Made by a program: the position numbers and the translations under genes. The notes under the pieces are model-generated. The model ran no database searches. It saw nothing but the letters and a program-made list of their open reading frames with translations, and was not told the origin of the DNA. 64,000 nt of DNA, from the IMG/VR virus record IMGVR_UViG_3300031951_000001, positions 258,373 through 322,372 of that record; one strand, written 5' to 3'. Position 1 is the stretch's first letter, and each line of letters begins with the position of its first letter. Shown piece by piece: positions 1,308 to 63,499 of this stretch.

Positions 1308-1314
1308 TATTTAT
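1308..1314 (+). promoter_or_regulatory. TATTTAT putative late-promoter motif
   Basis: Intergenic, 26 nt before ATG 1341; the motif recurs before many genes in the window. Confidence 0.5.
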
Positions 1315-1340
1315 GTATAAGGGTTAAAAAATAAAATAAT

Positions 1341-2249
1341 ATGGCAACAGGAACATATGGTACAATAAGACCGGCAGACGTTAGTCCCGAGGATGTTGAG
1401 ATAATTTTGAATTATACTCCATCTAGAGACGAAACTGACAATTTTATATTAACTAAATTAGATTCAGGTGCAATTCTAAAACCATACTTTTGTAATGATG
1501 ATACTGGTGGTAACGCTGGCATAGAAATATTGGGTGGGTTATATAATCTAACTTTACCTGCCGACACATTTAATAAGTTGGGAATTTATACCATTTTTGT
1601 AAGACCCACTCAAATTAGAACAACTATTTTGGATTGTGGTGTTTTATCCGCATTACCGAACGTGAGAGGGTTAGTTATTGATTTAAATTCTGTACCATCG
1701 GAGTATAGAAATAAATTCGTTGACCAAGGATTGGTCGGTTTTAGAATTGAGTATCTCAATTCAGATGGAACCAAAATACCTAACTTTTTCAGAATTATTA
1801 CATCGTCATTCTTTTGTGAACCTGTTATTCAAAACCTAACAAACACATCACAAAAGGCGATAAGATATCGTTATACAGATACAAATACAAATTTGATTTT
1901 TTGCACCCTAACACCATCATCATCACCAACAAATAAGCCAAACGCCATTCCTTATATTGGACAACCAAATCAAAATATTATAATAACCAATACATTCTTT
2001 AATCCAATAACTTTGGATGTGGAGATTGCAGAACATGACTTCTCTACTCTTGCAATTGCTCTATTTGGTAATCAGACCAAATCTATTGATGATGGAATTT
2101 ACACAATGTACGACACATCTAATAACATTTACAAACAATACAACCTATATGAAGTACGTGACCAATTCAATGAGTTATTGTTTGAGGTTAGGGAAGACAG
2201 AGGAGATAATATTGATTTTAGTAAAAACTTCACAAATATAACATCTTAA
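1341..2249 (+). CDS. Putative structural (baseplate-region) protein
   Basis: 302 aa ORF coupled to the next gene (TAATG); no recognised motif. Confidence 0.5.
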   Translation: MATGTYGTIRPADVSPEDVEIILNYTPSRDETDNFILTKLDSGAILKPYFCNDDTGGNAGIEILGGLYNLTLPADTFNKLGIYTIFVRPTQIRTTILDCGVLSALPNVRGLVIDLNSVPSEYRNKFVDQGLVGFRIEYLNSDGTKIPNFFRIITSSFFCEPVIQNLTNTSQKAIRYRYTDTNTNLIFCTLTPSSSPTNKPNAIPYIGQPNQNIIITNTFFNPITLDVEIAEHDFSTLAIALFGNQTKSIDDGIYTMYDTSNNIYKQYNLYEVRDQFNELLFEVREDRGDNIDFSKNFTNITS

Positions 2250-5200
2250 TGGCGATAAAGAAATTTACTTGTCCCCCTCAGGCTTCAGGCCAGGGTAGTT
2301 TTTCTGACAATCTCGTAGGTTTTCAACTAACCACGGGAGGAGGGTTAACGCAAGCAAATTTCGAGTTCTCAACAGGGGTCGTAGAAAAAGTTAATAGAAC
2401 ATTTAATACCGGTACATTTTCAGACCCAGTTAGTTTGGACTCACTTGGTATCGGGTCAGTAAATCAATCAAAGTTAATATTTGAGAATAACTTTAAGGTT
2501 TATCCTAATTTTGATTTATCTCAAATTACAAATTTTGTTCAGTATGGTTCGATGTCTAAAAGGATGTCGGCATCTATAACAACGGTTATTAGTAAGTTCC
2601 CCGCGGGTATTGAAGTTAATAAACTTGGTATGGACTACACCAAGGGTGCGACGGCTTACAATATTGTATATTACCCAATCGATGACCAAAGTAGTATGGA
2701 GATATCCGTTGCTAAAATGGCTAACCCATTTGGTGTTGATTTTACAGTAAACGCAACACGTAATTTACAGTTAAAGGAAGTTCAGGTATCACCACTCAGG
2801 AACATGACGGTTGAATATATTAATTATTCATTGTATGTTAATGGTGTTGGATACAACATCAAAAGAATTATTCCTACAGATAGTTTATCAACAGGGGTAT
2901 TAAAAATATATGTTGAGGGAAGACCGTTCAGTGGGGTTACTGATGTTAGTGATACTCTTATAATAAGACCGAACGACCAACAAGTCTCAAAAGTATTCAA
3001 CGAAGATTTAGACGAGGTTGAAAATTTTCTATTAAACAGAAATCTTACTCCGATTTATACTGCTGCATTTAAGATACCACTTGAGGCTGATGATGGAAGA
3101 TTTTATGTTGCAACACAAAATATAAGTTGGCCTTTAGATGGAAGATGGAATTTGGATATCAGAACGCCTAATTTTACAAACTATATTGAAAAGATAGGTG
3201 AAGCTAGTGAGAATTTTGATGGATACTTGACCAACTTGGTAAGTAGATTTTTAGTGACAGGGGCATTTAAAGACTTTGATACACAAGGACAAAAAGTTGA
3301 AAAAATATTACAAATTTTTGGTAGAAGTTTCGATGATACTAAAAAGTACATAACCGCTTTAGGGTTTATGAATTCCGTAAATTATAACACCGGAAATGAT
3401 ATACCTTCACAACTTTTAAAGAATTTAGCTCAAACTTTAGGGTTTAACACTGACATATCACCAATAACTAATTCAGACTTTTTAAGTTCGGTTTTCGGAC
3501 AAAAAAACAATGATAAATCTAGCTTTGCGGGAGTCTCAATACAACAAACACCCGATGAGTTAAATTATCAATATTATAGAAATTTATGTCTAAACGCGGC
3601 TTTTCTATTCAAATCAAAGGGTACTCGTAAATCAATTGAGGTATTGATGAGATTGATTGGGGCTCCCGATGCTCTTGTTGATTTTAATGAATATGTTTAT
3701 GTTGCGGACCAAAAGATTAAATTAAGTCAATTTGATAAAAAGTTTGCTCTTATATCGGGTGGTACTTATTTGGAACAGGTCGCGGTTTTAGACCCGACAG
3801 ATGTGTTCTCAATATTCGGGGTTAAATATACAGGGTTTACCACCAATTTTATTATTGATGATGTTAATATAGGGATAGGTGCTTATCCGATTGACGAACA
3901 AGGATATCCGATTGCTCCTAATGACACAGAAAATTACTTCTTTCAGATTGGTAGTGGTTGGTTTGAATCGACGCCAAAACATAGGTCTCCGGCTCAACCT
4001 AATTTAACAACAAGCGTATTCACAGGGGCAAATCCTGACTATCAGACGAGCTTAATCCCATATACATATGGACAAATTTATTTAGATAGATATAGAAATT
4101 TCCCGTATATGAGCATGGGTTTCAAATTGACTCAAATACCCGATAACAATAAGAGTTGGACTGATGCTGAAACTGGACTCAGAGAAAATTTAGATGGTAA
4201 CTTTAACGCTCGTTATTATGTTGATAATGAAAAGTTAGTATTAAATGCCAAGAACATAGACCTATTCATGAATCCTGGACAAGGATTGTTATATGATGTG
4301 TGGTATATGTCAAGACAATATAATTATCCTATTGCAAACCAAGGACTTGGGTGGGTACAACCTACAAGGTGTAATCCTGACCCTTATACTATGTATCCGA
4401 GTAGAGATGGGGTCGATTGGACGGTAATTAATCCACAACCAAGACAGAAAACATTTTTTGAATTTGCTCAAACATTTTGGCAGAACACAATCAATGTTAG
4501 AAACAGACAATATTTTGGAGCATACCCGACTTTAGAATCAATATATTGGAGATACCTAGAATCACAAAAAAATGTGGGAATTGAAAATAACAACTTCAAT
4601 TACCAAAGTATGATGGAGTATGTTCAGGATATGGGGGATTATTGGATTAGACTAGTTGAACAGATGATACCCGCAACAACTTTATGGAATACAGGTATCA
4701 AATATGAAAATTCAATTTTTCACAGACAAAAATATGTTTGGAGAAGACAGGCTGGTTGCCAGATTGTTGCAATACCCTGCAAACCCTGTACCGTTACGGA
4801 TAATATATTCACAGATAATTGTCCCGTTCAAACAGCGACTTGTTCCCTATATCCATGGAATCCGAACTCAAGTCAAATACAAAGTTTTGCCGCTATATTA
4901 GGTAACATTGTAAATAAGTATTTAACCAATAATGGATTGAGTTTAAATCAATGTGTTTCGGATAGTATAAATTCTATTTGGTATGTTGACATCAGATTAC
5001 AGGGGATTCAGTTAACGCAGTACCCATTTTTTAATGGAGTTGGTTATAATTTAGATGGATTGAGTTATCCTTCTAATTCGGATTGGTATAACGGTATAAA
5101 TGAAGCCCTAATGTCTTTATCTAATTATGGTTATAGTTACTATTTAACAGATACTGATGAAGTTGTAGTGATTAATAATATATGTTCATTGAACAGTAGT

Positions 5201-5254
5201 GGTATTTTGTTAGAAATAAATGTAGGTATAGAATTTACAATAAGTTGTAATTAA
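2249..5254 (+). CDS. Putative baseplate wedge protein
   Basis: 1001 aa; 'LLKNLAQTLG' and 'FLFKSKGTRKSIEVLMRLIG' resemble the KGT motif of baseplate wedge / P2 gpI-like proteins. Confidence 0.6.
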   Translation: MAIKKFTCPPQASGQGSFSDNLVGFQLTTGGGLTQANFEFSTGVVEKVNRTFNTGTFSDPVSLDSLGIGSVNQSKLIFENNFKVYPNFDLSQITNFVQYGSMSKRMSASITTVISKFPAGIEVNKLGMDYTKGATAYNIVYYPIDDQSSMEISVAKMANPFGVDFTVNATRNLQLKEVQVSPLRNMTVEYINYSLYVNGVGYNIKRIIPTDSLSTGVLKIYVEGRPFSGVTDVSDTLIIRPNDQQVSKVFNEDLDEVENFLLNRNLTPIYTAAFKIPLEADDGRFYVATQNISWPLDGRWNLDIRTPNFTNYIEKIGEASENFDGYLTNLVSRFLVTGAFKDFDTQGQKVEKILQIFGRSFDDTKKYITALGFMNSVNYNTGNDIPSQLLKNLAQTLGFNTDISPITNSDFLSSVFGQKNNDKSSFAGVSIQQTPDELNYQYYRNLCLNAAFLFKSKGTRKSIEVLMRLIGAPDALVDFNEYVYVADQKIKLSQFDKKFALISGGTYLEQVAVLDPTDVFSIFGVKYTGFTTNFIIDDVNIGIGAYPIDEQGYPIAPNDTENYFFQIGSGWFESTPKHRSPAQPNLTTSVFTGANPDYQTSLIPYTYGQIYLDRYRNFPYMSMGFKLTQIPDNNKSWTDAETGLRENLDGNFNARYYVDNEKLVLNAKNIDLFMNPGQGLLYDVWYMSRQYNYPIANQGLGWVQPTRCNPDPYTMYPSRDGVDWTVINPQPRQKTFFEFAQTFWQNTINVRNRQYFGAYPTLESIYWRYLESQKNVGIENNNFNYQSMMEYVQDMGDYWIRLVEQMIPATTLWNTGIKYENSIFHRQKYVWRRQAGCQIVAIPCKPCTVTDNIFTDNCPVQTATCSLYPWNPNSSQIQSFAAILGNIVNKYLTNNGLSLNQCVSDSINSIWYVDIRLQGIQLTQYPFFNGVGYNLDGLSYPSNSDWYNGINEALMSLSNYGYSYYLTDTDEVVVINNICSLNSSGILLEINVGIEFTISCN

Positions 5255-8200
5255 TGGCGATATGTAGTTTAACATATAGATTATCAGTGACTGGCGATTG
5301 TACTAACCAAGGTCTTGGGGCGTTCAATCTTCAGGTACAAGGTAGGGCTCCGTTTTTTTACCAATTTTTTTCACCATTTGACGACCCATTACCAATCCCT
5401 TTTGGGGATGGGGTAAGTGAGTTAACTATAAGTAATCTAACACCAAACACGTATTCATTACAAATCACAGATAGTTGTGTCCCACCCACTAGACAAATAG
5501 TTAACGTAATAATATCTGATGGAGTATGTGTTTCTTTATTGGACCATGCAAATACAACTTGTGATGCACCAAACGGGTCGATTACCGCAAGAACTGATAA
5601 TAACTTACAATTAACCCAATATTTTTTATATGAAAACACAAGAGGTTATGTTACTTCAGGAGTTTCTTCTTTAGATGATTTTGTTTTCAGAGATTTGTCA
5701 GGAGGTACTTATTATGTGGTGGTAAATGACGGAGGGGGATGTACAGGTAGGTCTGAAAGTTGTATAATTAAACCCTCAACTCCGTTTGATTACGGTTTTT
5801 ACATAGTAAACGATTCACCATGTACAACTAACACCGGTAAAGTATTCGTAACCGGCCTAACGGGAACCGAACCATACACGTATCAATGGAATACTGGAAG
5901 TATTGAACCTTCGATAACAGGTTTATCAAATGGTAATTATTCTGTCACAGTAGTTGATGCGACAGGATGTAGGAAATCAAAAAATGTTACAGTAGGTATG
6001 GTAAGGGCGATAGGGGTTGCTGAATTGATTACTATCCCACCGTCTTGTTCGGGTAATGATGGTCAAATAACCATAGTAGTTACAGGAGGAACAACTCCAT
6101 ATTATTATCTTGGTAGTAATGGACAAAGTTTAATTACTTTTAGCGAAACATTTAGTTTAACTGGAATACCATCTGGTAACTATTCCATTACAATCACTGA
6201 CGCAGCCTTATGTTCTACTAGTATTTCACAAACACTTGTAACCCCAAATGGATTTACTATAGGAAACATTGGAGTTGTTAACTCAACTTGTAACAATTCT
6301 TCAGGAGCATTGAGCCCCATAACACTAATTGGAGGAAACCCCCCATTTACGTATACTCTTACTTATCCATCGGGTAATTCGATACAGCAAACAGTAAACG
6401 GGAACTCAAATCAGTTTCAAGGACTATCCGCCGGCACATATACACTAACAATTTCAAATGGTCCGTGTACTTTCACAAATACGTATACAATTAATAATAT
6501 TGAAAAATATACCGTAACGACTTCCTCCACAGGAACAACCTGTAATGGTAGTAATGGTAGTATATCTGCAAGAGTATCTTCAGGGTTTACCTTACCTTTA
6601 AGTTATCAATTAACAGGGCAACCTACAATTAGTAATACATCACAGACCGTAGTCACATTTAACAATTTATTTTCAGGTAGTTACCAATTAACAGTAACTG
6701 ACGCTTTACTATGTTCACAAGTACAAAATGTAACGGTAACCGCAGCTGATAGCATTGATTTTTCTATGGCAGGAACCAATCTAAATTTTGGTAACGATGG
6801 AACAATTCAGGTTTATATAACCGAAGGGCCTGCACCTTATAATATACAATGGAGTGATAATGTTAATGGTCAAACAGGTTTGAATTTAACTAATCTTTCA
6901 GCCGGAACATATAGTGTTCTTATTACCGATGCTAATGGGTGCCAATTGAGTCATCAATTGACTTTGGTAGGGTATAATAACAGAGGTGGATATGAAACGT
7001 ATAACTATTGCCAAACAGAGTTTGTATCAAATGGTTTAACAGTTTTAAAGAGACCCCAAAATATGTTTTTAGAAGGGTTTTACGATTTAACTTCGGGTGA
7101 AACGAACTGTATTTTAAATGAGGCTATTTTTACTGCGGTAATTAGTGTTGATGGGACAGTTGTCGAGCAACCATTTTATACAAGTAACAGTTTAGGTGAC
7201 TATCCATCAGACCAATTGTGGTTTAATACGATAGATTCTATTTTAACATCTTTCGATTCAATTGGTAATGTCACCATAGACCCTGCTCAAAATAGTATAA
7301 CTCTTCAAAGTAGTTGTACTGATAGTGGATTAAGTTTGAACAGTGCTGAAGTAAGCGTTGATTTCAAAATTTCGTATGACATTTCCTGTGTATGTAAAGT
7401 TATACCAATACCAGGACCTGTATTTAACACATGTGATATGATATATACCGACGCTTCATCCCAAATATATAATTATGTTTTAAGTTCAGATACGAGCACT
7501 TTATTAAGTGTTGATGGATATAATTTTGATACCCCAAGTATTGCCTATACCAATACAAAATTGTGGGCGTACACTACATCAGCCGGTTCAACCTCAATTA
7601 GAGAATGGGATATTACTCTGAATCCATTTACCGCTTTATATAATAGAACAATAACTTTAGGATTTGCGATTGGTAATGCAATAGGAGTTAAATCAGGTAA
7701 TATATTAATTACAACAAATGCGGATGTAACACCTAATAGATATATTGAAATAAATGTTTCAGGAATATCTCCTGTTGTTACAAATAAAGTTAATTTAGAA
7801 AACTTCGAAGAAGTTGTAGGAAGTATAGTTAATGGAAATGACGGAAACTTCTATGTGTTAATTCAAAATAATCTGAATGAACCATTTGTCGATTATTACT
7901 TAAAAATCGTTAGTACTTTCGATTATTCGACTACATTCACATTGGAATTAACACCTACTATAGTAGGTGTTCCTTCAGGATTATTCTTTAATCCTGATTT
8001 GGTAAATAATTCTATAATTTATTTGGTTGATGATGCTGCTAATATATATCAAGTCACTTTATCCCAACCAAATAGCGTATTATCATATGGTTCTATCGGA
8101 GGAGCGGTAATAACCCCTAGCTTATATCAAGGTAATAGTTGTTTCACACCAGAATTTGTTTTACCAACATTACCATGTGGACAAAATAGTACATTAGGGT

Positions 8201-8742: not shown

Positions 8743-8772
8743 AGAATAAATTAAAAGATTACTTAAAAATAA

Positions 8773-11261: not shown

Positions 11262-11269
11262 TATTTATA
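11262..11269 (+). promoter_or_regulatory. TATTTATA putative late-promoter motif
   Basis: Intergenic, just upstream of ATG 11274. Confidence 0.5.
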
Positions 11270-14867: not shown

Positions 14868-15722
14868 TTAAGATAAATATTGTCTAATATCCATAGAAAA
14901 CACCGTATCGAGGACATCTTGGGGTACTCTGAACTCCTCGAAATCGGAATTTTCTTTCAGTAACACAATGATACAACCAAAAATTTTAATATCCTCATAC
15001 TTTGACCCTTTTAACATTTCCTTAAGTAACTTTCCATAAAATGGTAGCTGTAAGAAGTAGTGTCCTAACGCATTATCGGGATGTTTTTGAAATGGGGACT
15101 TCATTCTTTTGGTAAATTGGTTCTCCTCAAAATTTTTTGGCTTGTTTGTCTTCCAATCTGTTATGATAATACCAACACTTTTTTTATCCCTACTTTCAAT
15201 TAACCAAACTTTATCAGGTTGTCCAGTATATCCAAGACCCGGGTCACCCAAAACAATCTCCGTATCCAAAAGTTCAGCACCTCGTTCTCTCATAAGTTTG
15301 AGGTAATTGGTTCCGGCATTAATCATACTATCCCCCTTTAGTGTTTGAGTAAAATCACACTCAAACATAGGTTCCCTAACCTCCTTGTCATGTCCAAACA
15401 TTTCAAGTATTTTTTTCTCCAAGAAAAAATGGACCCTACTACCCATATTGGTTGAGTAATCACCAGCGGCTTTCCACTCGGCAAGTAATCGTTGTTGCTC
15501 AATAATATCACCTTTTGCTTTCTTTAGTGATATCTCCTCTGCGGGAAATTCCTCGTAAAACTTTTTTAATAGTTTAGATACTGAAGGGAAGTCACCTTTA
15601 ATTTCACCACTCAAATCTTTCATAAAGTATTTGTGTTCCTCTTCTATGAAAGTTAAATCAATCTCCTTCCGTCTTTTGTGTAATATTTCCCTTATTTCTT
15701 CTGATAATTTCTTTAATTCCAT
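14868..15722 (-). CDS. PD-(D/E)XK exonuclease (Cas4/RecB-like fold)
   Basis: 'PSVSKLL', 'GSRVH', 'TEIVL...GQPDKVW...ITDWKT', 'LQLPFYG'; ATG at 15722 preferred over the track's 15758. Confidence 0.8.
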   Translation of the reverse strand: MELKKLSEEIREILHKRRKEIDLTFIEEEHKYFMKDLSGEIKGDFPSVSKLLKKFYEEFPAEEISLKKAKGDIIEQQRLLAEWKAAGDYSTNMGSRVHFFLEKKILEMFGHDKEVREPMFECDFTQTLKGDSMINAGTNYLKLMRERGAELLDTEIVLGDPGLGYTGQPDKVWLIESRDKKSVGIIITDWKTNKPKNFEENQFTKRMKSPFQKHPDNALGHYFLQLPFYGKLLKEMLKGSKYEDIKIFGCIIVLLKENSDFEEFRVPQDVLDTVFSMDIRQYLS

Positions 15723-17029: not shown

Positions 17030-17036
17030 TATTTAT
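17030..17036 (+). promoter_or_regulatory. TATTTAT putative late-promoter motif
   Basis: In the divergent intergenic region, 18 nt before ATG 17055. Confidence 0.5.
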
Positions 17037-19578: not shown

Positions 19579-19586
19579 TATTTATA
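19579..19586 (+). promoter_or_regulatory. TATTTATA putative late-promoter motif
   Basis: Intergenic, 22 nt before ATG 19609. Confidence 0.5.
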
Positions 19587-24054: not shown

Positions 24055-24067
24055 TATATATAAAGGG

Positions 24068-35430: not shown

Positions 35431-35438
35431 TATTTATA
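35431..35438 (+). promoter_or_regulatory. TATTTATA putative late-promoter motif
   Basis: Intergenic, 16 nt before ATG 35455. Confidence 0.5.
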
Positions 35439-40012: not shown

Positions 40013-42385
40013 ATGGATTTGTTTAATCCCCCACCAAATTTCAACTATAAAAAAATGATTCATAAGTTAGATACTAATTCGCTTGATAATCCATACATAC
40101 AGGTCGTATGGGAGGATTATGCTGAAAATATCACGCAAGAAAAGATAAAAAGCGTAAGACATTATTTTCAAAAGAAGTATCTATCAACAAATGTTAATGT
40201 CATAACCAAGACAAAGACATCTGATGAGACCGTTCAGACAGTTGATATTTCATTCAATGTATTGGATAAGAATTATCAACTTGAATTAATGAAGTCTTTT
40301 TTAACTAATAAGGGTAATGATAACCTTTATGATGAAATTTATAAGTTGGATGGTATTGTTGATAGTAAGTTGGCGATGGATGACTCTGAAGTAACACCAT
40401 TCAAACGGTGGTATATCAAAAAAATAGAGTTCTCTAACTTTCTATCATATGGGGAAAATCAAGTTGTTGATTTCACAAAGTGTGATGGTATCACGGTGAT
40501 TGAGTCTAACCCACCAAACTTTGGAGGTAAGACCGTATTGTCGGTTGACTTGTTATTGTTCCTATTCTTCAATGAGACTACCAAGACATCAAAGGCTGAA
40601 GAGGTATTCAATCGTTTCACGGATAAGAACAAGGTATCTGTCAAAGGTGAAATCATTATTGATGGTGATGAATACATTATTGTTCGTAACATTGAACGTA
40701 AGAAGTCTAAAGCTGGTGATTGGAATGTTAAGACCGAGCTAGACTTCTTTAAGAAACTATCTGATGGTAGTCTTATGAATTTCACTGGTGAGCAAAGACG
40801 TGAGACTGAAACGTTTATCAAGAATTCTATTGGGTCAAAGGAAGATTTTCTTATGACTATCCTTACAACGGCAACTAATCTTGAGGATTTGATTGACTCT
40901 AAACCAACAGCTCGTGGTCAAGTGTTATCACGATTTATGGGTCTTGAGTTTCTAAAACGTAAGGAAGACGCTGCGAAGGAAGTGTTCAGTGAGTTTTCAA
41001 AATCAATGATTTCAAATGTTCATAATAGTGAGCAATTGAAAACTGAAATTGAGAATTGTAAAAACGGTATTCAAGAACATAAGAATACCATTGGTGAGAG
41101 ACAGAGTGAATTAATTGATGTTCAGAACAGAATTATCAAAGGTCAAGAATATCGTGATGGGTTGTTAAAGAACAAACACACCGATATTGATAAAGAGATT
41201 AGTATGGTACAACCGGCTCAAGTTAAGTCCGAGATTGCCGACCTAAACTTCAAGAAAGATGTTGTGGTTAAACAATTATCTGAAGTCAAAGTTGTTGAAC
41301 CATCCAAGTATTATCACGAAGACAAACACGATAAAGTTAAAGATGAATACAACAAATCATTTAAACAAATGGTTGAGGTTGAAAGTAAGATTAAATCAAT
41401 TGAAGAATTAAAGAGTTCTGTTGAAGGTGGAATAAAATGTGAACACTGTGGAATTGACTTAATGATGGCCTCAATTACACAATCTAAAATTGCCGAACTT
41501 GATGGTTATATCCAGCAAAAAGACCAAATTTATACCACAATGCAGGTTTTAACCAGCACAGAACAAACATTTGTTAGACTTAAAAAAGAATTTGATGAAT
41601 ACGAAAAGAATAAACTAGTCAAAGAAAAACTCGACTTGAGCATTGAAAGTTTTGATATGAAAATTGAGAAACTCCATGACAAATTGAAAAAGTACGAAGA
41701 GGCCCAAGACAAAATTCAAGAAAATACCAAAATTGAAGAACAACTCCTCAAAGCCAATATGAGACTTGACGATTTGGAAAATCAAAAAACGTCAGTTAAT
41801 AATGAGTTAACTCGTCTCAACTTTGACATTGAAAAACTTAATGATAAGATTGATAATAACAATAAGATTATTGAGAAGATAAAGCAAGAAGCGGAGAGAG
41901 AAAAAATCTATAAAGTTTATTTGGAGATTTATGGTAAGAACGGAATTTCAAAGATTATCATGAAAACCATGATGCCACTTATCAACTCTGAACTTCAAAG
42001 ACTTTTAGAAAACAGTTGTCATTTCAGATTGGAAATTCAAATTAATGAAAAGAATGAGGTTGAATTCATCATGGTTGATAACAATACCCAAGTTGAAAAA
42101 CTTATGTCATCAGGGTCAGGGTATGAACGTACAATAGCATCGCTGGCGTTAAGAGCGGTATTAAGTAAGATATGTTCATTACCAAAACCAAATATCATAG
42201 TTTTTGATGAAGTTTTTGGTAAAATATCTAATGATAATCTTGAAATGGTTTCAGAATTTTTCACAAAAATCAAAGATTATTTTGAAAAAATTTTCTTAAT
42301 AACTCACAATCCATTAGTTACCAACTGGTCGGATAATGTTATCAGGATTAGAAAGGAAGAAAATATTAGCTACGTGTCACAATAA
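40013..42385 (+). CDS. sbcC: Rad50/SbcC (T4 gp46-like) SMC ATPase
   Basis: 'IEFSNFLSYG', Walker A 'NFGGKT', coiled coil with CEHC zinc hook, 'SGSGYE' signature, Walker B 'VFDEVFG', 'LITH'. Confidence 0.9.
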   Translation: MDLFNPPPNFNYKKMIHKLDTNSLDNPYIQVVWEDYAENITQEKIKSVRHYFQKKYLSTNVNVITKTKTSDETVQTVDISFNVLDKNYQLELMKSFLTNKGNDNLYDEIYKLDGIVDSKLAMDDSEVTPFKRWYIKKIEFSNFLSYGENQVVDFTKCDGITVIESNPPNFGGKTVLSVDLLLFLFFNETTKTSKAEEVFNRFTDKNKVSVKGEIIIDGDEYIIVRNIERKKSKAGDWNVKTELDFFKKLSDGSLMNFTGEQRRETETFIKNSIGSKEDFLMTILTTATNLEDLIDSKPTARGQVLSRFMGLEFLKRKEDAAKEVFSEFSKSMISNVHNSEQLKTEIENCKNGIQEHKNTIGERQSELIDVQNRIIKGQEYRDGLLKNKHTDIDKEISMVQPAQVKSEIADLNFKKDVVVKQLSEVKVVEPSKYYHEDKHDKVKDEYNKSFKQMVEVESKIKSIEELKSSVEGGIKCEHCGIDLMMASITQSKIAELDGYIQQKDQIYTTMQVLTSTEQTFVRLKKEFDEYEKNKLVKEKLDLSIESFDMKIEKLHDKLKKYEEAQDKIQENTKIEEQLLKANMRLDDLENQKTSVNNELTRLNFDIEKLNDKIDNNNKIIEKIKQEAEREKIYKVYLEIYGKNGISKIIMKTMMPLINSELQRLLENSCHFRLEIQINEKNEVEFIMVDNNTQVEKLMSSGSGYERTIASLALRAVLSKICSLPKPNIIVFDEVFGKISNDNLEMVSEFFTKIKDYFEKIFLITHNPLVTNWSDNVIRIRKEENISYVSQ

Positions 42386-42416
42386 TTTGTGTAATTGAAA
42401 AGTTTGAGTATCTTTG
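42386..42416 (+). promoter_or_regulatory. Bacteroidota-type promoter TTTG-N19-TATCTTTG
   Basis: TTTG 42386-42389 and TATCTTTG 42409-42416, upstream of ATG 42432. Confidence 0.7.
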
Positions 42417-42431
42417 TCAAAAATTAATCAT

Positions 42432-42929
42432 ATGAACTACTTATTAATTGTATTCGGAAAAAATATGAACGAAGTGTCGGCAATCGATATTTGCGAAAAA
42501 ATTACAGGAGAAGAAAAAATTCATGAGGTACAATACCATGTAACCGATGACTCCATAACAATACTGTTCAAGAGTATTCTGGCCCAAAAGAAACTACATC
42601 AAATTTTCTCACCAATTTTTGGAGAAAAGAACACAATCTATGTTCTATTAGAAAATGTCAGCGACATAAACTCCGCTAACATGGCTAAAGGAATTTACCA
42701 AATGTTCTTCAATAATGAAGAGGTGAATGAAAATGAAGAAGTGATAGAATTTGAAGAGGAGGAAGAATTTGATATCGATGTTAGTAAATTAAGAGACTTA
42801 TTGAATAAGAAAGTTGAAGAAAAAGAATTAACTTTGGACGAAATCTTGGATAAGATTAATACCCAAGGGATATATTCACTAACAGATAAAGAAAAAAAAC
42901 AATTAGATAATTACGCAAACAATATATGA
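42432..42929 (+). CDS. Hypothetical protein with C-terminal DUF6576-like motif
   Basis: 'LDEILDKINTQGIYSLTDKEKKQL'; ATG 42432 lies downstream of the promoter. Confidence 0.6.
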   Translation: MNYLLIVFGKNMNEVSAIDICEKITGEEKIHEVQYHVTDDSITILFKSILAQKKLHQIFSPIFGEKNTIYVLLENVSDINSANMAKGIYQMFFNNEEVNENEEVIEFEEEEEFDIDVSKLRDLLNKKVEEKELTLDEILDKINTQGIYSLTDKEKKQLDNYANNI

Positions 42930-43726
42930 AAGACAAAAACACAGGTATTCCTATTAACCAAGAAGAAATTCAATATTACCTCAAAGACATTCGCAAAATA
43001 AAGGTAATGTCTCCCGAACGTGAGCGTGAGCTCGCCTCAAGAATGTTGTCTGAAAACATTACAGATAAGGAACGTAAAGAAATTGAAAAAGAATTGTTGA
43101 TTGGTAACTTACGTTTTGTAATTACCGTGGCCAAACAATATCAGAATCAAGGATTAGATTTCCCTGACCTCATTGCCGAAGGTAACTTGGGTCTTATGAA
43201 AGCTATCCATAACTTTGATTGGAGTAAAAATCTTCGTTTCATATCATACGCAGTGTGGTGGGTTAAACAATCAATCCTTCAATCTCTTAACGACAATGCT
43301 CGTACAATCCGACTACCAGTAAATGTTGTACAGGACCTACAACGAGCAAAGAAAGAGGTTGAGTCAAAGGGTGGTAAGTTGGATGAGAAGTTTGAGATGT
43401 TACCTTCGATTATTGACCTTGATATGAATATCAATGAGGAAGGTGATACACTTGTCGATATTATTAAAAATGAAGACGCTGACATGCCTGACGCGGTATT
43501 CAACAACAAAGATGTACTGAAGTCGGAGTTAATCAATCTTCTAAACGTTTTGGACGAACGTGAAAAAGTAATCGTACTTGACTACTTTGGTCTAACTGGT
43601 ACTCCACGAACATTGGAAGATATCGGAACAGATTTTGGTCTTACCAAAGAACGTGTAAGACAAATCAAAGAGAAAGCGTTGAGGAAATTACGAAACGAAA
43701 GTTCAGTACTTTTCGACTACATGTAA
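42926..43726 (+). CDS. RNA polymerase sigma-70 factor (RpoD/RpoS-like, lacking region 1.1)
   Basis: 'NLRFVITVAKQY', 'DLIAEGNLGLMKA', 'RFISYAVWW', 'RTIRLP', 'TLEDIG...LTKERVRQIKEKALRKLR'. Confidence 0.92.
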   Translation: MKDKNTGIPINQEEIQYYLKDIRKIKVMSPERERELASRMLSENITDKERKEIEKELLIGNLRFVITVAKQYQNQGLDFPDLIAEGNLGLMKAIHNFDWSKNLRFISYAVWWVKQSILQSLNDNARTIRLPVNVVQDLQRAKKEVESKGGKLDEKFEMLPSIIDLDMNINEEGDTLVDIIKNEDADMPDAVFNNKDVLKSELINLLNVLDEREKVIVLDYFGLTGTPRTLEDIGTDFGLTKERVRQIKEKALRKLRNESSVLFDYM

Positions 43727-43736
43727 AAAATAAAAG

Positions 43737-43768
43737 ACCTTCTATTTATTATAATAGAAGGTTTTTTA
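43737..43768 (+). terminator. Rho-independent terminator after the sigma gene; overlaps a TATTTAT motif
   Basis: ACCTTCTATT-tattat-AATAGAAGGT followed by a T run. Confidence 0.75.
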
Positions 43769-48032: not shown

Positions 48033-48040
48033 TATTTATA
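48033..48040 (+). promoter_or_regulatory. TATTTATA putative late-promoter motif
   Basis: Intergenic, 14 nt before ATG 48055. Confidence 0.55.
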
Positions 48041-52927: not shown

Positions 52928-52977
52928 ATTATTTTTTTAGTAATAATAAATAAAGGAATAAATTTTTCAATTCAAAA

Positions 52978-53013: not shown

Positions 53014-53853
53014 ATGTTAAGCTATATAGGAGGTAAATCAAAGATAGGTAAATGGATAGTTCCATATTACCCAAAGGACATGGAAACATATGTTGAAACA
53101 TTCGGAGGAATGTTTTGGTGTTTCTTTAATATGGATTTGAAACAATACCCAAATCTCAAACGGGTTGTTTACAATGACTTCAATCCACTAAATTACAATT
53201 TGTTCATGTGTCTTCAACAACCTGAATTATTATTGTCTGCGGTAAATTCAATACCGTGCCAGCAACAAGGAGTTGAAGTTACACCGGCAATATATAAAGA
53301 ACAGTTTAACGAGTTTCAACAAGAAATATTTGGGGATGGTTTTACAATCAACTATCCTGACTATGATGTCGCGGCAAAATACTCATACGTTCTTACACAA
53401 GTGTTCAGTGGTTCTAAACCTGAAACAAGTTCGTTTATTGATTTAAAGGGTAAGTACAAATCAAAGTATCTTACGTTCAGAGACAAGTTATCTAAACCTG
53501 ATTGGGTAGAACATTTTAACAGGATAAGTCATTTTAGATTGGGTGACTTTGAGAATGTTATTAAGGAGTTTGATAGCTCTACAACTTATTTTTATCTTGA
53601 CCCACCGTATTGGAAAACCGAAAATTACTACTCAAACCATGACTTTGACCGTGATGACCATGAGAGACTGGCAAATGTGTTGAAAACTATTGAAGGAAAG
53701 TTTTCGTTATCTTACTATGATTTCGTACTTTTGTCGGAGTGGTTTCCCCAAGACCAATATAGATGGGAAAAGAAGGAATTTGCTAAGGCCGCCGCAGCAA
53801 AGAAAGGACAATCCCAAAATATGGGTGAGGAGTTGCTAATTATGAATTATTGA
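53014..53853 (+). CDS. Dam-family (D12 class) DNA N6-adenine methyltransferase
   Basis: 'SYIGGKS', 'YVETFGG', 'VYNDFN', 'YLDPPY'. Confidence 0.88.
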   Translation: MLSYIGGKSKIGKWIVPYYPKDMETYVETFGGMFWCFFNMDLKQYPNLKRVVYNDFNPLNYNLFMCLQQPELLLSAVNSIPCQQQGVEVTPAIYKEQFNEFQQEIFGDGFTINYPDYDVAAKYSYVLTQVFSGSKPETSSFIDLKGKYKSKYLTFRDKLSKPDWVEHFNRISHFRLGDFENVIKEFDSSTTYFYLDPPYWKTENYYSNHDFDRDDHERLANVLKTIEGKFSLSYYDFVLLSEWFPQDQYRWEKKEFAKAAAAKKGQSQNMGEELLIMNY

Positions 53854-53855: not shown

Positions 53856-53863
53856 TATTTATA
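53856..53863 (+). promoter_or_regulatory. TATTTATA putative late-promoter motif
   Basis: Intergenic, 14 nt before ATG 53878. Confidence 0.55.
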
Positions 53864-55248: not shown

Positions 55249-55279
55249 TTTGGCGGTTTGATTTGTTTTTCTATATTTG
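55249..55279 (+). promoter_or_regulatory. Bacteroidota-type promoter TTTG-N19-TATATTTG
   Basis: TTTG 55249-55252 and TATATTTG 55272-55279. Confidence 0.7.
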
Positions 55280-56448: not shown

Positions 56449-57519
56449 TTATTTAGAAACTTCCCACCATTTAGGACCTTCGTTAGATAAAAAGTCTACC
56501 TTTTTTTCATTTTTACCACCCATTGATACAACCCAAGTAATCATAGCTTCTCCATCTTTACTCAGTAATTTAGTTCCTGGAGTTGCTAATCTTTCCCCAT
56601 GGACACTATGAAAAATAATCGGAATTCCGTTTTTAATTGCACCTACATAACCAACGTGTGTATTAAAAGTAAATGGTGTTTTGTCTTGATAAATACCGGT
56701 TTTGTCTAATTGTCTATTTTGGACAGCTCTTTCACAAAATGCTTTTCCTTTATTACCTGAGTTACCATAGTACATACCAACAATATCCCCAACCTTTAAA
56801 GATGAAAGATTTACGTTTGATTTGGATGGATAAAAACTAGAAATGGTTGATGAAATTTTACTACCATTTTTACAACTTTTATCTTTACCCTCACCTTCTA
56901 GCTCAAAACAAGAACAAGAGTCCGAGTTTACAAATTTTGAGTTTCTAATATTGTCCCAATTAATCGAACCGTCGGTGAACATATTATATAAAACTGACCC
57001 TTTAGTTTTTGCGTTAACAAAAGCTTGCCACGCATTTCCAAGATAGTTACCCGTCATTTTTCTAACATATTCAGAACATCCTTCACCACCGCCATTACCA
57101 ATTGTGGACTCATTTTTATCTGAAATTTTATTACAAAGTGTATTATCAACCGCAACACAACTCTCTGTTCCCGACACTTTATTTTTTTCCTCAGATTTTT
57201 TTTGTAAAGACTTAATACCCATACTCATTACAGTTTTTGTATCTATTTTACCTGTAATTGGTAAGTTATTATCTTTTTGATATTTTTTTAAAGCGGTTAT
57301 TGTTTTTCCCCCAAAAATCCCGTCAACTCCGTCTAAATTTTTTCCACTCCTACCCAATAAACTACCATATTTAGGTTTAAGTTTTTTTTGTACGTCATAC
57401 ACAGTTTGGGAAAAACCTTCATCTAATCTAATTTTATTTTTTGATTTTGAAATGGCTTCTTTGTGTAAATTCAAAATTCTACTTTGTTCTTCTTCGGATA
57501 TTAGTAATTTTTTTAACAT
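56449..57519 (-). CDS. Peptidoglycan-binding domain + CHAP/NlpC-like cysteine hydrolase
   Basis: 'DGIFGGKTITALKKYQKDNNLPITG' (PG_binding_1); 'GCSEYV...GNAW', 'VGDIV', 'THVGYV' Cys-His dyad. Confidence 0.75.
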   Translation of the reverse strand: MLKKLLISEEEQSRILNLHKEAISKSKNKIRLDEGFSQTVYDVQKKLKPKYGSLLGRSGKNLDGVDGIFGGKTITALKKYQKDNNLPITGKIDTKTVMSMGIKSLQKKSEEKNKVSGTESCVAVDNTLCNKISDKNESTIGNGGGEGCSEYVRKMTGNYLGNAWQAFVNAKTKGSVLYNMFTDGSINWDNIRNSKFVNSDSCSCFELEGEGKDKSCKNGSKISSTISSFYPSKSNVNLSSLKVGDIVGMYYGNSGNKGKAFCERAVQNRQLDKTGIYQDKTPFTFNTHVGYVGAIKNGIPIIFHSVHGERLATPGTKLLSKDGEAMITWVVSMGGKNEKKVDFLSNEGPKWWEVSK

Positions 57520-57532: not shown

Positions 57533-57540
57533 TATAAATA
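57533..57540 (-). promoter_or_regulatory. TATTTATA putative late-promoter motif (minus strand)
   Basis: tataaata on +, 13 nt upstream of minus-strand ATG 57519. Confidence 0.55.
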
Positions 57541-57997: not shown

Positions 57998-59023
57998 TTA
58001 TTTTATACAGGATAAACTTTTAGCTGTATTAACGACCTCCTTCAAATATCCTAAACTGCTAATATATTGAATTGTTGGTTCATCTGAAACTAAATTAATT
58101 GCTTTTTGGGTTACTGTAGTTGTATCAGTTTTGATATTTGGAATATAGTTTTTTATAACTTGGTTTTTATCTACTTTTAGTACCAAATCAGGTTTATCTT
58201 TAGGAAATGGTTGATATACACCATTAATACTATCACACGGAGCCATAAATTCAGGATTGTTTGTTTTACAATATTTTTTCTTAAATCTAGATGAACCTAA
58301 ATTATATGACATAATTGCGGCATCCATAACACTATTATTTGATGAAGATGGATTATCTATGAGTTGACCTTGGTTTATTATTTTAGACGGACTTTTACTA
58401 TCATAATATGGGGTTAATTCTTCGTATAAATTTATAAGGTGTTTAGTAACTGCTAAAAGTGAACCTGATAATGACATCAATTCCTCCAAATCTACTCCAT
58501 ATTTTTTTGCGATATCTGGAGTCATTTGAGCAATTCCCATACTCGGAACCCAATTATCTTTATTAAAAACTTTTTTAGCCCCATATTTCAAAACCTCACT
58601 AAAACCCGGTATTGTATCACTAAGCTTATTCATCAAGTATTCTGGTGCTGCTTTAATACCGTACATACCCATAACCTTACCAAAATCAGATTCTCTACCA
58701 ATTATTCCTATTGCATATTTTACGTAAAGTGGGTCAAAACCTTCAGAAATTACAGATACCGCAGCTGTTGAAATTTCAGGTGTGGTACAAGTATATTTGT
58801 TGAGGTTCAAATCGTATGTTTTGACAACGCTTTGACTTTTAATTGGGGTATTTTGGGTGACTGGTTGTTGTTTGGATACTTGTTGCATTCGATTCATTCC
58901 TTGAGCATATTTTTTTTGTTCTTCAGGCTTCAATGTGTTAGTTTTAAATTTGGTTTGCTCTAAAATTATTTTTTTTACAATTTTAAACAAATCAGATTCA
59001 GTGAGTTTGATAACTTTTTTCAT
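57998..59023 (-). CDS. Lysozyme-fold / transglycosylase-like protein with an N-terminal leader motif
   Basis: 'IIGRESDFG', 'SMGIAQMTP', 'AIMSYNLG'; N-term MKKVIKLTESDLFKIVKKIILEQ. Confidence 0.7.
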   Translation of the reverse strand: MKKVIKLTESDLFKIVKKIILEQTKFKTNTLKPEEQKKYAQGMNRMQQVSKQQPVTQNTPIKSQSVVKTYDLNLNKYTCTTPEISTAAVSVISEGFDPLYVKYAIGIIGRESDFGKVMGMYGIKAAPEYLMNKLSDTIPGFSEVLKYGAKKVFNKDNWVPSMGIAQMTPDIAKKYGVDLEELMSLSGSLLAVTKHLINLYEELTPYYDSKSPSKIINQGQLIDNPSSSNNSVMDAAIMSYNLGSSRFKKKYCKTNNPEFMAPCDSINGVYQPFPKDKPDLVLKVDKNQVIKNYIPNIKTDTTTVTQKAINLVSDEPTIQYISSLGYLKEVVNTAKSLSCIK

Positions 59024-59172
59024 TTGACTATAAAAAAATAAATATGTATCTTATTTCTTAATAAATAGATTTGAAATCAAATTAATACAGTCAGATTAAC
59101 AAAATTACTTATATTTGAAAAAAATTTTTTAAGATATAAAAATCTATATTTAATACTACATAACTTTATTCT

Positions 59173-63190: not shown

Positions 63191-63225
63191 AAAAAGGGGA
63201 ATAAATTCCCCCTTTAATTTTTTTT
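63191..63225. terminator. Probable terminator hairpin
   Basis: aaaaaggggaat-aa-attccccctttaa followed by a T run; imperfect inverted repeat downstream of the minus-strand 47 aa gene. Confidence 0.55.
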
Positions 63226-63246
63226 ACACCCAACATCCCATTCATA

Positions 63247-63390
63247 TTATTTCTTATAATACTTCTCAACAACCTTATTTACCTGTTCTTGAACAGTTTG
63301 GTTATTTTGAGGCGTTTGAATTTGACCAGGTGCTGGTTGAGCAGGTGCCGCTTGAGCTTCTGCCTGTTTGTTTTTACATCCACATCCCAT
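63247..63390 (-). CDS. Small MGCGC-start peptide
   Basis: 47 aa MGCGCKNKQAEAQAAP...VVEKYYKK; TATTTAT upstream on the minus strand (63434-63440). Confidence 0.65.
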   Translation of the reverse strand: MGCGCKNKQAEAQAAPAQPAPGQIQTPQNNQTVQEQVNKVVEKYYKK

Positions 63391-63492
63391 GTGATTAGTT
63401 TTTTTAGGTAGTTTATTTCTTATCGTTATAAACATAAATATCTTTATTTGAGACAATTTGTAAAGAATATTGCTTTATTTACGAAATAAAAA

Positions 63493-63499
63493 TATTTAT
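63493..63499 (+). promoter_or_regulatory. TATTTAT putative late-promoter motif
   Basis: 7 nt upstream of ATG 63507. Confidence 0.5.

What the first reader, a model, noticed from the sequence alone, without database searches (positions are those of the whole stretch)
1308..63499. TATTTAT(A), a putative phage late promoter that is the reverse complement of the T4 late promoter
Seen: TATTTAT(A) lies on the sense strand in short intergenic gaps at 1308, 11262, 17030, 19579, 35431, 43743, 48033, 53856 and 63493 (+), and at 52946, 57533, 59038/59061 and 63434 (-). These positions are before structural and leader-bearing genes. Established: the T4 late promoter is TATAAATA on the sense strand, and TATTTATA is its reverse complement. 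Inference: a distinct -10-only late promoter read by a phage sigma. AT-richness makes some chance hits likely.
Basis: partly seen in the sequence, partly recalled or inferred. Interest (0 to 1): 0.6.

Follow-up and report, generated by a model that had tools for sequence, protein, structure and literature searches.

The report
Phage-specific promoter box TATTTAT(A)
TATTTAT is a real, strictly gene-oriented and evolutionarily conserved promoter-like box of a 322-kb T4-like freshwater phage that probably infects Bacteroidota. It is most likely the -10-type element read by the phage's own gp55-like sigma factor, which would make it a T-rich variant of the classical T4 late promoter.

Summary
All 14 listed sites exist. 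A whole-window count shows no excess (37 vs 37.8 expected), but position and orientation are far from random. In the window, 16 of 37 copies lie in the 4.6% that is intergenic. Genome-wide (322 kb), TATTTAT is the commonest sense-strand 7-mer upstream of genes: 119 observed against 15-32 expected. Gaps between same-strand genes hold 73 sense and 6 antisense copies; convergent gaps hold none. In relatives it stays invariant amid diverged flanks (61/61 and 49/50 at two head-gene positions).

The box has no -33/-35 partner. A putative start A lies 5-6 nt downstream, and the ATG follows at 4-6 nt (leaderless) or 14-18 nt.

A second class, the host-type Bacteroidota promoter TTTG-N19-20-TAnnTTTG, marks an early-like arm and drives the RpoD-like sigma gene in the window.

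The phage is T4-like (gp20 portal, gp23 capsid, gp46/47) and has a second, divergent gp55-like sigma outside the window. Flavobacterium phage immuto and phage Mel-JY01 have only that sigma and use the same box. In immuto it lies mostly in the structural-gene region.

Verdict: a real promoter element, and a new variant of the T4-type late promoter. "Late" and the reading sigma are inferred, not shown. Site 43743 is a terminator hairpin.

The parts
1308..1314 (+). P-type box, 26 nt before the ATG of gene 1341-2249, which heads the run 1341-11247 of large ORFs
11262..11269 (+). P-type box TATTTATA, 5 nt before the ATG of gene 11274-13679 (leaderless-type spacing)
14873..14879 (-). It lies 23 nt before the ATG of the transglycosylase-like gene 14283-14849, within the last codons of the exonuclease-like gene.
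17030..17036 (+). P-type box, 18 nt before the small ORF 17055-17270, which is followed by gene 17272-19545
19579..19586 (+). P-type box, 23 nt before the 1481-aa ORF 19609-24054, which is followed by the 3782-aa ORF 24068-35416
35431..35438 (+). P-type box, 17 nt before gene 35455-35784
42385..42416 (+). Host-type Bacteroidota promoter (TTTG, spacer, TATCTTTG), 15 nt before the DUF6576 gene 42432-42929, which overlaps the sigma gene. Relatives keep TAnnTTTG here in 44 of 49 unique upstream regions.
42926..43726 (+). RpoD-like phage sigma factor, 266 aa (Sigma70 regions 1.2, 2 and 4; phrog_351). It sits next to the gp47-like gene (38238-39032) and the gp46-like gene (40013-42385).
43731..43768 (+). 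Intrinsic terminator hairpin after the sigma gene. The TATTTAT at 43743-43749 forms part of its 5' arm and loop, so this site is probably not a promoter.
48033..48040 (+). P-type box (TATTTATATAAAAA), 15 nt before gene 48055-49467
52946..52952 (-). P-type box, 18 nt before the small ORF 52763-52927
53856..53863 (+). P-type box (TATTTATAATAAAA), 15 nt before the leucine-rich-repeat protein gene 53878-55242
57533..57540 (-). P-type box, 14 nt before gene 56449-57519, whose product carries the N-terminal leader
59038..59044 (-). P-type box, 14 nt before gene 57998-59023 (leader-bearing). A second copy lies at 59061-59067, 37 nt upstream of the ATG.
63434..63440 (-). P-type box, 43 nt before a doubtful 47-aa ORF (63247-63390). 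This is the weakest of the listed sites.
63493..63499 (+). P-type box, 7 nt before the ATG at 63507 of the ORF that runs off the window (leader-like N-terminus, MGKIKLTESE)
55272..55279 (+). Host-type -7 box TATATTTG with an upstream TTTG. It is one of five such promoters in the window; the others start at 42409, 53002, 55610 and 57607.

Best explanation
TATTTAT(A/T), usually preceded by A, is the core of the phage's own promoter class. It is a -10-type element with no -33/-35 partner. Host core RNA polymerase would use it once it carries a phage-encoded sigma. The most likely reader is the divergent, two-domain gp55-like sigma at genome 136629-137381 (minus strand, outside the window), not the RpoD-like sigma in the window.

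Proposed order of events:
1. Host sigma-A polymerase fires the bipartite host-type promoters (TTTG-N19-20-TAnnTTTG) of the early arm.
2. The gp55-like sigma then directs transcription from the TATTTAT boxes. They are the nearest upstream promoter type for about 70% of coding capacity, including all head, packaging and giant structural genes.
3. Transcription starts at an A 5-6 nt after the box. This gives either leaderless mRNAs (ATG 4-6 nt after the box) or leaders of about 10 nt.

Shown: non-random placement, strict orientation, conservation, lack of an upstream element, and co-occurrence with the gp55-like sigma across lineages. Inferred: that it is a promoter at all, the start site, the timing, and which sigma reads it.
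For: Placement and orientation.

Conservation: in 80 capsid-gene neighbourhoods of relatives, same-strand gaps hold 380 sense and 80 antisense copies in 36 kb, against 331 copies in 893 kb of coding DNA. The box is invariant in 61/61 and 49/50 orthologous upstream regions while the flanks have diverged.

Anatomy from 423 unique sites: A/T-only positions 14-17 nt upstream, A at -1, A-rich positions 5-7 nt downstream, and a two-peaked distance to the ATG (4-5 and 14-16 nt). No TTG occurs upstream, whereas the host-type set shows TTG 22-23 nt before its TA.

The geometry matches measured Flavobacterium promoters, where the start site lies 4-5 nt after the -7 element and AT-rich patches sit at -18 and -28 (PMC6847099). 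The host-type promoters in this genome show the same two ATG spacings.

The major capsid gene has a 28-nt A-rich gap with no box, so the box is not needed for translation.

No Pfam RNA polymerase beta or beta-prime catalytic domain was found in the genome.

T4-like core: Portal_T4 2e-77, Gp23 2e-73, Terminase_6N.

Second sigma:
- Weak hit to phrog_234, the T4 gp55 family (E 0.005).
- Nearly all of the top 50 Foldseek matches to its model are sigma factors, though none reaches E <= 0.001. They include sigma-E region 2 bound to a -10 element (probability 0.97, rmsd 3.1 A).
- Over 8,000 homologs.

Natural experiment:
- Flavobacterium phage immuto has a homolog of this sigma (E 3e-15 and 1e-92). 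The gene lies between the gp47-like and gp46-like genes, which is the T4 gene 55 neighbourhood.
- Immuto has no RpoD-like sigma.
- Immuto has 36 sense and 12 antisense boxes, mostly in its structural-gene region, while its block of small genes uses host-like bipartite promoters.
- Mel-JY01 shows the same pattern: sigma homolog at E 2e-32, no RpoD-like sigma, ATATTTAT 16 sense and 1 antisense.

The RpoD-like sigma operon has a host-type promoter in 44 of 49 relatives.

Of 29 genes with a capsid-targeting-like N-terminal leader, 23 carry the box and none carries a host-type promoter.
Against: There are no transcription-start or expression data. The two RNA-labelled runs hold only contigs of relatives, and the tool marks them as probably DNA.

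Sequence-level membership of the divergent sigma in the gp55 family is weak: hhalign probability 6-10%, no PDB sequence hit, and a model pLDDT of only 70.

In this genome that sigma gene sits deep in a tightly packed operon. The only recognisable upstream promoters are themselves P-type, which is awkward for a factor needed to read them. In immuto a host-like promoter lies about 2 kb upstream.

The box also precedes the DnaB helicase gene, upstream of ribonucleotide reductase, so it is not restricted to classical late functions.

No gp45-type clamp and no clear gp33 homolog were found.

Co-occurrence across three lineages is correlative.
Confidence: 0.6

Rival explanations
1. The box is a promoter, but it is read by the RpoD-like sigma in the window (42926-43726). 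That sigma would be made early from a host-type promoter and would switch the polymerase to TATTTAT. The gp55-like protein would then do something else or read a subclass.
For: The sigma gene lies downstream of a conserved host-type promoter (44 of 49 relatives), which is the expected wiring for the first step of a cascade. It is the only clear Sigma70_r2 protein in the genome. The box also precedes replication genes, which suits a middle class. In this genome the gp55-like gene appears to depend on P-type promoters.
Against: Immuto and Mel-JY01 use the same oriented box and have no detectable RpoD-like sigma. This sigma has a full region 4, which normally needs a -33/-35 element, and the box has none. 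Its architecture resembles that reported for the Bacteroidota primary sigma, which lacks region 1.1, so it fits the bipartite host-type promoters better.
Confidence: 0.2
2. The box is a variant of the host -7 element, used directly by host sigma-A polymerase without any phage sigma.
For: It shares geometry with host promoters: the position relative to the putative start, and AT-rich patches that fall about -18 and -28 from the putative start. With a 5-nt spacing to the start, TATTTATW matches TAHHTTTG at six of eight positions.
Against: In Flavobacterium promoters T-7 and G-5 are nearly invariant (PMC6847099), whereas the box has A and W at those positions if the start lies 5 nt after the box. 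The two classes are cleanly separate in sequence and in map position: host-type promoters occur almost only in 0-100 kb and 300-322 kb, and the box is nearly the only type in 100-300 kb. In immuto, early-like and structural regions use different boxes.
Confidence: 0.08
3. The box acts in RNA rather than DNA. It would be a translation-initiation enhancer for a host that does not use Shine-Dalgarno sequences, or an RNA processing site.
For: The spacing to the ATG is tight and two-peaked. The host type lacks Shine-Dalgarno use and prefers A/U-rich leaders.
Against: - The most highly expressed structural gene, the major capsid gene, lacks the box in this genome and in 66 of 79 relatives, having only an A-rich gap.
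- Host-type promoters, which are accepted DNA signals, show the same two spacings.
- The box often sits directly after a terminator hairpin.
- It sometimes lies 40-60 nt from the ATG, as before the portal gene.
- At 4-6 nt from the ATG it is too close to serve as a ribosome landing site.
Confidence: 0.07

Closest known systems
T4 late promoter TATAAATA, read by gp55 with gp33 and the gp45 clamp (established knowledge; Geiduschek and Kassavetis 2010, as cited in PMC5259590)
   Same: - An AT-only element of 7-8 bp about 10 bp upstream of the start, with no -35 partner, close to the start codon, and in front of head, packaging and tail genes of a T4-like phage.
- The outer bases TAT..ATA are identical.
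- A gp55-like sigma candidate is present, and in the relative immuto it lies in the gene 46/47 neighbourhood as in T4.
   Different: - The two central bases are TT rather than AA on the non-template strand.
- The sigma candidate is about 65 residues longer, with an extra C-terminal helical domain.
- No gp45-type clamp or gp33 was detected.
- The box also heads replication and many small genes.
- About a third of copies abut the ATG (leaderless layout).
Bacteroidota primary-sigma promoter: -33 TTTG and -7 TAnnTTTG (TAHHTTTG) (PMC6847099)
   Same: The distance to the putative start is the same (4-5 nt after the element). AT-rich patches fall at about -18 and -28. Part of the sequence overlaps (TA..TTT). 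Genuine examples of this class occur in the same genome and drive the window's sigma operon.
   Different: The box lacks the nearly invariant G-5, has A where T-7 would be (assuming a 5-nt spacing to the start), and has no TTG/TTTG upstream. It is segregated from the host-type class along the genome.
ATAAATA late motif of the Rak2/GAP32/CBB jumbo phages, which also have a gp55-like sigma (PMC5259590)
   Same: Jumbo phages with a T4-like core, a gp55-like sigma without detectable gp33 or gp45, and a short AT-only motif before structural genes. Their capsid proteins are about 33% identical to this phage's.
   Different: Those phages keep the T4 orientation and core (ATAAATA in the sense strand). 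Here that word is almost absent in sense orientation (6 of 79 copies in same-strand gaps).

Membership tests
T4-type (gp55-dependent) late promoter | Single -10-region element with no -35 element | tested here: met
   No TTG or other conserved upstream word in 107 sites from this genome or 423 pooled sites; only an A/T-only patch 14-17 nt upstream.
T4-type (gp55-dependent) late promoter | Consensus TATAAATA on the non-template strand | tested here: not met
   The consensus is (A)TATTTAT(A/T). Sense-strand TATAAATA is not enriched: 19 sense against 56 antisense, and 6 of 79 copies in same-strand gaps. The two words differ at the two central positions.
T4-type (gp55-dependent) late promoter | The genome encodes a gp55 homolog | tested here: inconclusive
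   For:
- phrog_234 hit at E 0.005 (genome search) and 0.048 (protein scan).
- Shared N-terminal KPKxNY and HNFD..AY motifs.
- Nearly all of the top 50 fold matches are sigma factors.
- The immuto homolog lies between the gp47-like and gp46-like genes.

Against:
- hhalign probability only 6-10%.
- tblastn with T4 gp55 finds nothing.
T4-type (gp55-dependent) late promoter | gp33 co-activator and gp45 sliding-clamp activator | tested here: not met
   No DNA_PPF (gp45) match in the genome. The small gene downstream of the sigma is only a positional candidate for gp33 (E 0.056 between lineages). Distant homologs could have been missed.
T4-type (gp55-dependent) late promoter | Precedes late (virion and packaging) genes and is active late | tested here: inconclusive
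   Position is met: the box precedes the terminase, portal and head genes and the giant ORFs, and in immuto it lies mostly in the structural region. It also precedes the DnaB helicase gene. Timing could not be tested, because no usable RNA data exist.
Bacteroidota sigma-A promoter (-33/-7) | -7 element TAnnTTTG with invariant T-7 and G-5 | tested here: not met
   The box has no G, and it forms a class distinct from the 37 TAnnTTTG sites in the same genome.
Bacteroidota sigma-A promoter (-33/-7) | -33 TTTG about 19-20 nt upstream of the -7 element | tested here: not met
   TTG frequency stays below 10% at every upstream position for the box. For the host-type set it reaches 43% across the two positions 22-23 nt upstream.
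Promoters of phage-encoded multisubunit RNA polymerases (phiKZ/AR9 type) | The genome encodes split beta/beta-prime-like polymerase subunits | tested here: not met
   No RNA_pol_Rpb1_2 or RNA_pol_Rpb2_6 match at E <= 1. Very divergent subunits cannot be excluded.

The most novel reading that the evidence does not exclude
A deep branch of the T4 superfamily has re-specified its late-type promoter from TATAAATA to TATTTAT(W). The branch includes these abundant freshwater jumbo phages, Flavobacterium phage immuto and Mel-JY01, and perhaps Rhodothermus phage RM378, which uses TATTTAA. The change would go together with an enlarged, two-domain gp55-like sigma. In the jumbo members a captured RpoD-like sigma would additionally take over host-type promoters, giving a two-sigma cascade. 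About a third of the new promoters abut the ATG, so the phage would rely heavily on leaderless mRNAs in a host where transcripts are mostly leadered.
Probability: 0.4. Interest if true: 0.65.

Novelty: new variant of a known kind. Interest (0 to 1): 0.55.

Why it matters
If confirmed, this gives the first promoter consensus for a large and environmentally abundant group of T4-like phages. More than 590 related contigs are present in IMG/VR, and the gp55-like sigma has over 8,000 homologs.

It would allow operon and timing maps of otherwise unannotatable jumbo phage genomes. It also offers a natural specificity switch for studying how minimal gp55-type sigmas read the -10 region: AA changed to TT at the centre of an otherwise identical box.

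A cultured relative, immuto on Flavobacterium sp. LMO8, carries the same box and sigma, so the idea can be tested directly. The paired host-type and phage-type promoters and the leaderless layout would also be useful parts for genetic tools in Bacteroidota.

Tried and rejected
- Whole-window and whole-genome counts against shuffles or the reversed word show no excess. This test ignores position, so it says nothing about function.
- E. coli-type -35/-10 promoters are not enriched (71 found against 75 expected).
- No nucleotide-level relative in the cultured-phage collection, and no tRNA in the window.
- Pfam RNA polymerase beta and beta-prime domains are absent.
- T4 gp55 found nothing when searched directly against the genome. 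phrog_12791 and the gp45 clamp family gave none.
- PDB sequence searches with the divergent sigma, alone or as a profile, gave nothing. hhalign against T4 gp55 gave a low probability.
- A weak tblastn hit of that sigma in immuto at 24.8 kb was a chance match to an unrelated 141-aa ORF. The real homolog was found by profile search.
- No third motif emerged from the gaps that lack both boxes. One-mismatch variants of the box show no strand bias.
- Flanks of boxes near the capsid gene and near the sigma gene could not be compared to look for subclasses, because most sigma-side sites are the one terminator site.
- RNA evidence: the two RNA-labelled aquatic runs hold contigs about 90% similar, marked by the tool as probably DNA, with no start information.
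- Literature searches found no earlier description of TATTTAT as a phage promoter.
- Site 43743 is rejected as a promoter because it is a terminator hairpin.

Full report
WHAT THE WINDOW IS

The window is the last 64 kb of a 322,372-bp IMG/VR virus record. G+C is about 35%. There is no Shine-Dalgarno signal, and the region upstream of start codons is A-rich, as in Bacteroidota (PMC6847099).

The phage is a distant member of the T4 superfamily. It has a T4-type portal (Portal_T4, 2e-77), a gp23-type capsid protein (2e-73) and a T4-type large terminase. The window itself holds gp47-like (38238-39032) and gp46-like (40013-42385) genes.

The closest cultured phages by capsid protein are Microcystis phage Mel-JY01 (40% identity), Flavobacterium phage vB_FspM_immuto (41%) and Rhodothermus phage RM378 (36%). 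Near-identical DNA occurs in lake and freshwater metagenomes. More than 590 related loci are present in IMG/VR.

CHECK OF THE OBSERVATION

All coordinates are correct. Placement and orientation are another matter.

- In the window, 16 of 37 copies lie in 2,938 nt of intergenic DNA. Thirteen or fourteen of them lie within 60 nt upstream of a same-strand start.
- Genome-wide, 134 of 240 copies lie in the 6.6% of the genome that is intergenic. TATTTAT is the most frequent of the 21 words of its composition between genes and the least frequent inside genes.
- It is the top sense-strand 7-mer upstream of genes: 119 copies, against 15-32 expected from Markov models of the same DNA.
- Gaps between same-strand genes hold 73 sense and 6 antisense copies, and convergent gaps hold none.
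- My start-codon refinement could have favoured the motif. The unrefined longest-ORF model gives 65 sense and 7 antisense, with the same distance profile. All analyses of relatives used unrefined ORFs.

ANATOMY

From 423 non-identical sites (this genome plus relatives), the consensus has three parts:
- an A/T-only patch 14-17 nt upstream;
- A, then TATTTAT, then A or T;
- an A-rich stretch whose strongest positions are the 5th to 7th nt after the box.

There is no TTG or other -33/-35-like word.

The distance from the box to the ATG has two peaks, at 4-6 nt and at 14-18 nt. If transcription starts at the A 5-6 nt after the box, the first group gives leaderless mRNAs and the second gives leaders of about 10 nt. 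Many boxes sit directly after a hairpin followed by a T-run.

A SECOND PROMOTER CLASS IN THE SAME GENOME

Gaps without the box revealed TATATTTG(T) and TATCTTTG(T), both sense-only. This is the Bacteroidota -7 element TAnnTTTG, and TTG peaks 22-23 nt upstream of it, which is the -33 element.

In Flavobacterium johnsoniae this element spans -12 to -5, the start lies 4-5 nt after it, and AT-rich patches sit at -18 and -28 (PMC6847099). The TATTTAT box has the same geometry relative to its putative start. The host-type promoters here show the same two ATG spacings. This parallel is my main argument that the box acts as a promoter rather than in RNA.

Host-type promoters occur almost only in 0-100 kb and 300-322 kb. 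These two stretches form one arm if the genome is circularly permuted. They precede mostly small genes. The box occurs everywhere and is nearly the only type found in 100-300 kb. About 70% of coding capacity has it as the nearest upstream promoter type, against 10% for host-type promoters.

CONSERVATION

In 80 capsid-gene neighbourhoods of relatives (76-89% capsid identity), same-strand gaps hold 380 sense and 80 antisense boxes in 36 kb. Coding DNA holds 331 copies in 893 kb.

Upstream of the gene that precedes the capsid gene, 61 of 61 relatives keep TATTTAT. Upstream of another head-region gene, 49 of 50 do. The flanking bases have diverged freely, and the proteins are down to 40-60% identical.

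The capsid gene itself has a 28-nt A-rich gap with no box in this genome and in most relatives. This argues against a role in translation.

WHICH POLYMERASE AND WHICH SIGMA

No Pfam RNA polymerase beta or beta-prime catalytic domain was found in the genome. Two sigma-like genes were.

(a) Window 42926-43726 encodes a 266-aa RpoD-like protein with regions 1.2, 2 and 4. It overlaps a DUF6576 gene that is preceded by a host-type promoter at 42385-42416. In relatives, 44 of 49 unique upstream regions keep TAnnTTTG and only 3 have TATTTAT. This gene therefore looks like an early gene transcribed by the host holoenzyme.

(b) Genome 136629-137381 (minus strand) encodes a 249-aa protein with these properties:
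- It gives a weak hit to the T4 gp55 family, phrog_234 (E 0.005).
- It shares the N-terminal KPKxNY motif and the HNFD..AY motif with gp55.
- It has more than 8,000 homologs, the closest 120 of which are at least 79% identical.
- Its model (pLDDT 70) retrieves sigma factors almost exclusively among the top 50 Foldseek matches. These include sigma-E region 2 bound to -10 DNA, although none reaches E <= 0.001.
- hhalign against the single T4 gp55 sequence is not significant.

THE NATURAL EXPERIMENT

Flavobacterium phage immuto has a full-length homolog of protein (b) (26% identity, E 8e-14; profile E 3e-15 and 1e-92). It is annotated as hypothetical. Its gene lies between the gp47-like phosphohydrolase gene and the gp46-like ATPase gene, which is the neighbourhood of gene 55 in T4. 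Immuto has no RpoD-like sigma detectable by tblastn or by Pfam Sigma70_r2.

Even so, TATTTAT is among the top two sense-strand 7-mers in immuto's gaps (36 sense, 12 antisense). The copies lie mostly in the structural-gene region (78-160 kb), including in front of the portal gene. The block of small genes at 60-76 kb instead uses TTG-spacer-TATATTTAGGTAT promoters.

Mel-JY01 behaves the same way: sigma (b) homolog at E 2e-32, no RpoD-like sigma, and ATATTTAT 16 sense against 1 antisense. RM378 uses a close variant, TATTTAA (17 sense, 3 antisense), and no homolog was detected at the threshold used.

The box therefore travels with sigma (b), not with the window's sigma. In both the jumbo phage and immuto the gene right after sigma (b) carries a box, and Mel-JY01 has a copy about 60 nt downstream of its homolog.

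One difficulty remains. In the jumbo phage, sigma (b) is translationally coupled to the upstream gene and has no recognisable promoter within 4 kb. The nearest upstream boxes are P-type. In immuto a host-like promoter lies about 2 kb upstream.

IS IT 'LATE'?

For:
- Its position before the terminase, portal, head-morphogenesis and giant ORFs.
- The segregation of the two classes in immuto.
- Of 29 genes whose products begin with a shared leader (MKKxIRLTESEL-like), 23 carry the box and none carries a host-type promoter. The leader contains the L/I-x-E pattern cut by T4-type prohead proteases (my knowledge, untested here). If it is a capsid-targeting leader, these small genes would be late genes even though they lie in the early-looking arm.

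Against:
- The box also precedes the DnaB-like helicase gene, with ribonucleotide reductase two genes downstream, and a superoxide-dismutase fusion gene.
- No expression data exist. The two RNA-labelled runs contain only contigs of relatives and are probably DNA.

I therefore call the class 'post-early'.

RELATION TO THE T4 LATE PROMOTER

TATTTATA is formally the reverse complement of TATAAATA. Because the T4 box is nearly palindromic, the two differ only at the two central bases when read in the same direction. The T4 orientation is not used here: sense-strand ATAAATA makes up 6 of 79 copies in same-strand gaps. In Rak2/CBB-type jumbo phages, by contrast, ATAAATA precedes structural genes (PMC5259590).

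With a 5-nt spacing to the start, the box also matches the host TAHHTTTG at six of eight positions. The mismatches fall at T-7 and G-5, which are nearly invariant in host promoters, so a different sigma is plausible.

SITE-BY-SITE IN THE WINDOW

Good promoter candidates:
- Plus strand: 1308, 11262 (leaderless type), 17030, 19579, 35431, 48033, 53856, 63493.
- Minus strand: 57534, 59038 (with a second copy at 59061), 52946.
- The unlisted site at 14873 on the minus strand.

The site at 63434 (minus strand) is weak, as it lies 43 nt before a doubtful 47-aa ORF.

The site at 43743 lies inside the terminator hairpin after the sigma gene (43731-43768; -19.1 kcal/mol, z = -6.5). This hairpin is conserved in relatives, so the site is probably not a promoter.

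VERDICT

The motif is real and functional-looking. It is best read as the -10-type core of a phage-specific promoter class in a T4-like lineage that probably infects Bacteroidota, and so as a new variant of the gp55-type late promoter. My estimates are about 0.85 that it is a promoter element, and about 0.6 for the full statement that includes the gp55-like reader. Nothing here is experimentally shown.

Noticed in passing
window 57998-59023 (-), 56449-57519 (-), 63507-end (+); genome-wide 29 genes, e.g. genome 28683-40325: A family of genes whose products start with a shared leader (MKKxIRLTESELxxIVKRII or MKYLITESK). Of the 29, 23 have a TATTTAT box and none has a host-type promoter. The L/I-x-E pattern resembles T4 prohead-protease sites, so these may be capsid-targeted internal proteins.
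   Followed up: partly
window 42385-43726: A phage RpoD-like sigma (regions 1.2, 2 and 4, no region 1.1) is co-transcribed with a DUF6576 gene from a conserved host-type promoter. It sits beside the gp47/gp46-like genes, where T4 and immuto place their gene 55 or its homolog. Its own target promoters are unknown; possibly it takes over the host-type class.
   Followed up: partly
genome-wide; window examples 11262 (+) and host-type sites: Both promoter classes are often placed 4-6 nt from the ATG (35 of 119 P-type sites). This predicts many leaderless mRNAs, whereas 87% of Flavobacterium johnsoniae transcripts have leaders longer than 10 nt (PMC6847099).
   Followed up: partly
window 19609-35416: Two giant ORFs (1481 and 3782 aa) lie in a stretch with strongly negative GC skew (-0.25 to -0.32) and positive AT skew, unlike the rest of the window. 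The 1481-aa protein matches only phrog_15511 (unknown function).
   Followed up: no
genome 136246-136617 (-), outside the window; immuto 78906-79256: A small gene (123 aa; 116 aa in immuto) directly follows the gp55-like sigma gene and carries its own TATTTAT box in both phages. By position it is a candidate gp33-like co-factor, but the similarity between the two is only E 0.056.
   Followed up: partly
genome 137378-161922 (-), outside the window: A long minus-strand block around the gp55-like sigma is full of sugar-modification genes: GDP-mannose dehydratase, a DegT aminotransferase and several glycosyltransferases. This suggests virion or DNA glycosylation, or host-surface modification.
   Followed up: no
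window 51850-52773, 53014-53853, 53878-55242, 44938-45540: Accessory genes include a full DnaJ-type chaperone, a Dam-type N6-adenine methyltransferase, a leucine-rich-repeat protein and an Amidase_2 lysin.
   Followed up: no
Mel-JY01 (PP395634.1), loci L267-L276: This phage is recorded as infecting the cyanobacterium Microcystis. Yet it shows a sense bias of the Bacteroidota-type box TAnnTTTG (20 against 11), the TATTTAT box and 34% G+C. The recorded host may deserve a second look.
   Followed up: no
RM378 (NC_004735.1), loci L277-L283: Rhodothermus phage RM378 has a related sense-biased word, TATTTAA or TTATTTAA (17 against 3, and 11 against 1), in its same-strand gaps. This may be the same promoter family in a further host phylum.
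   Followed up: no
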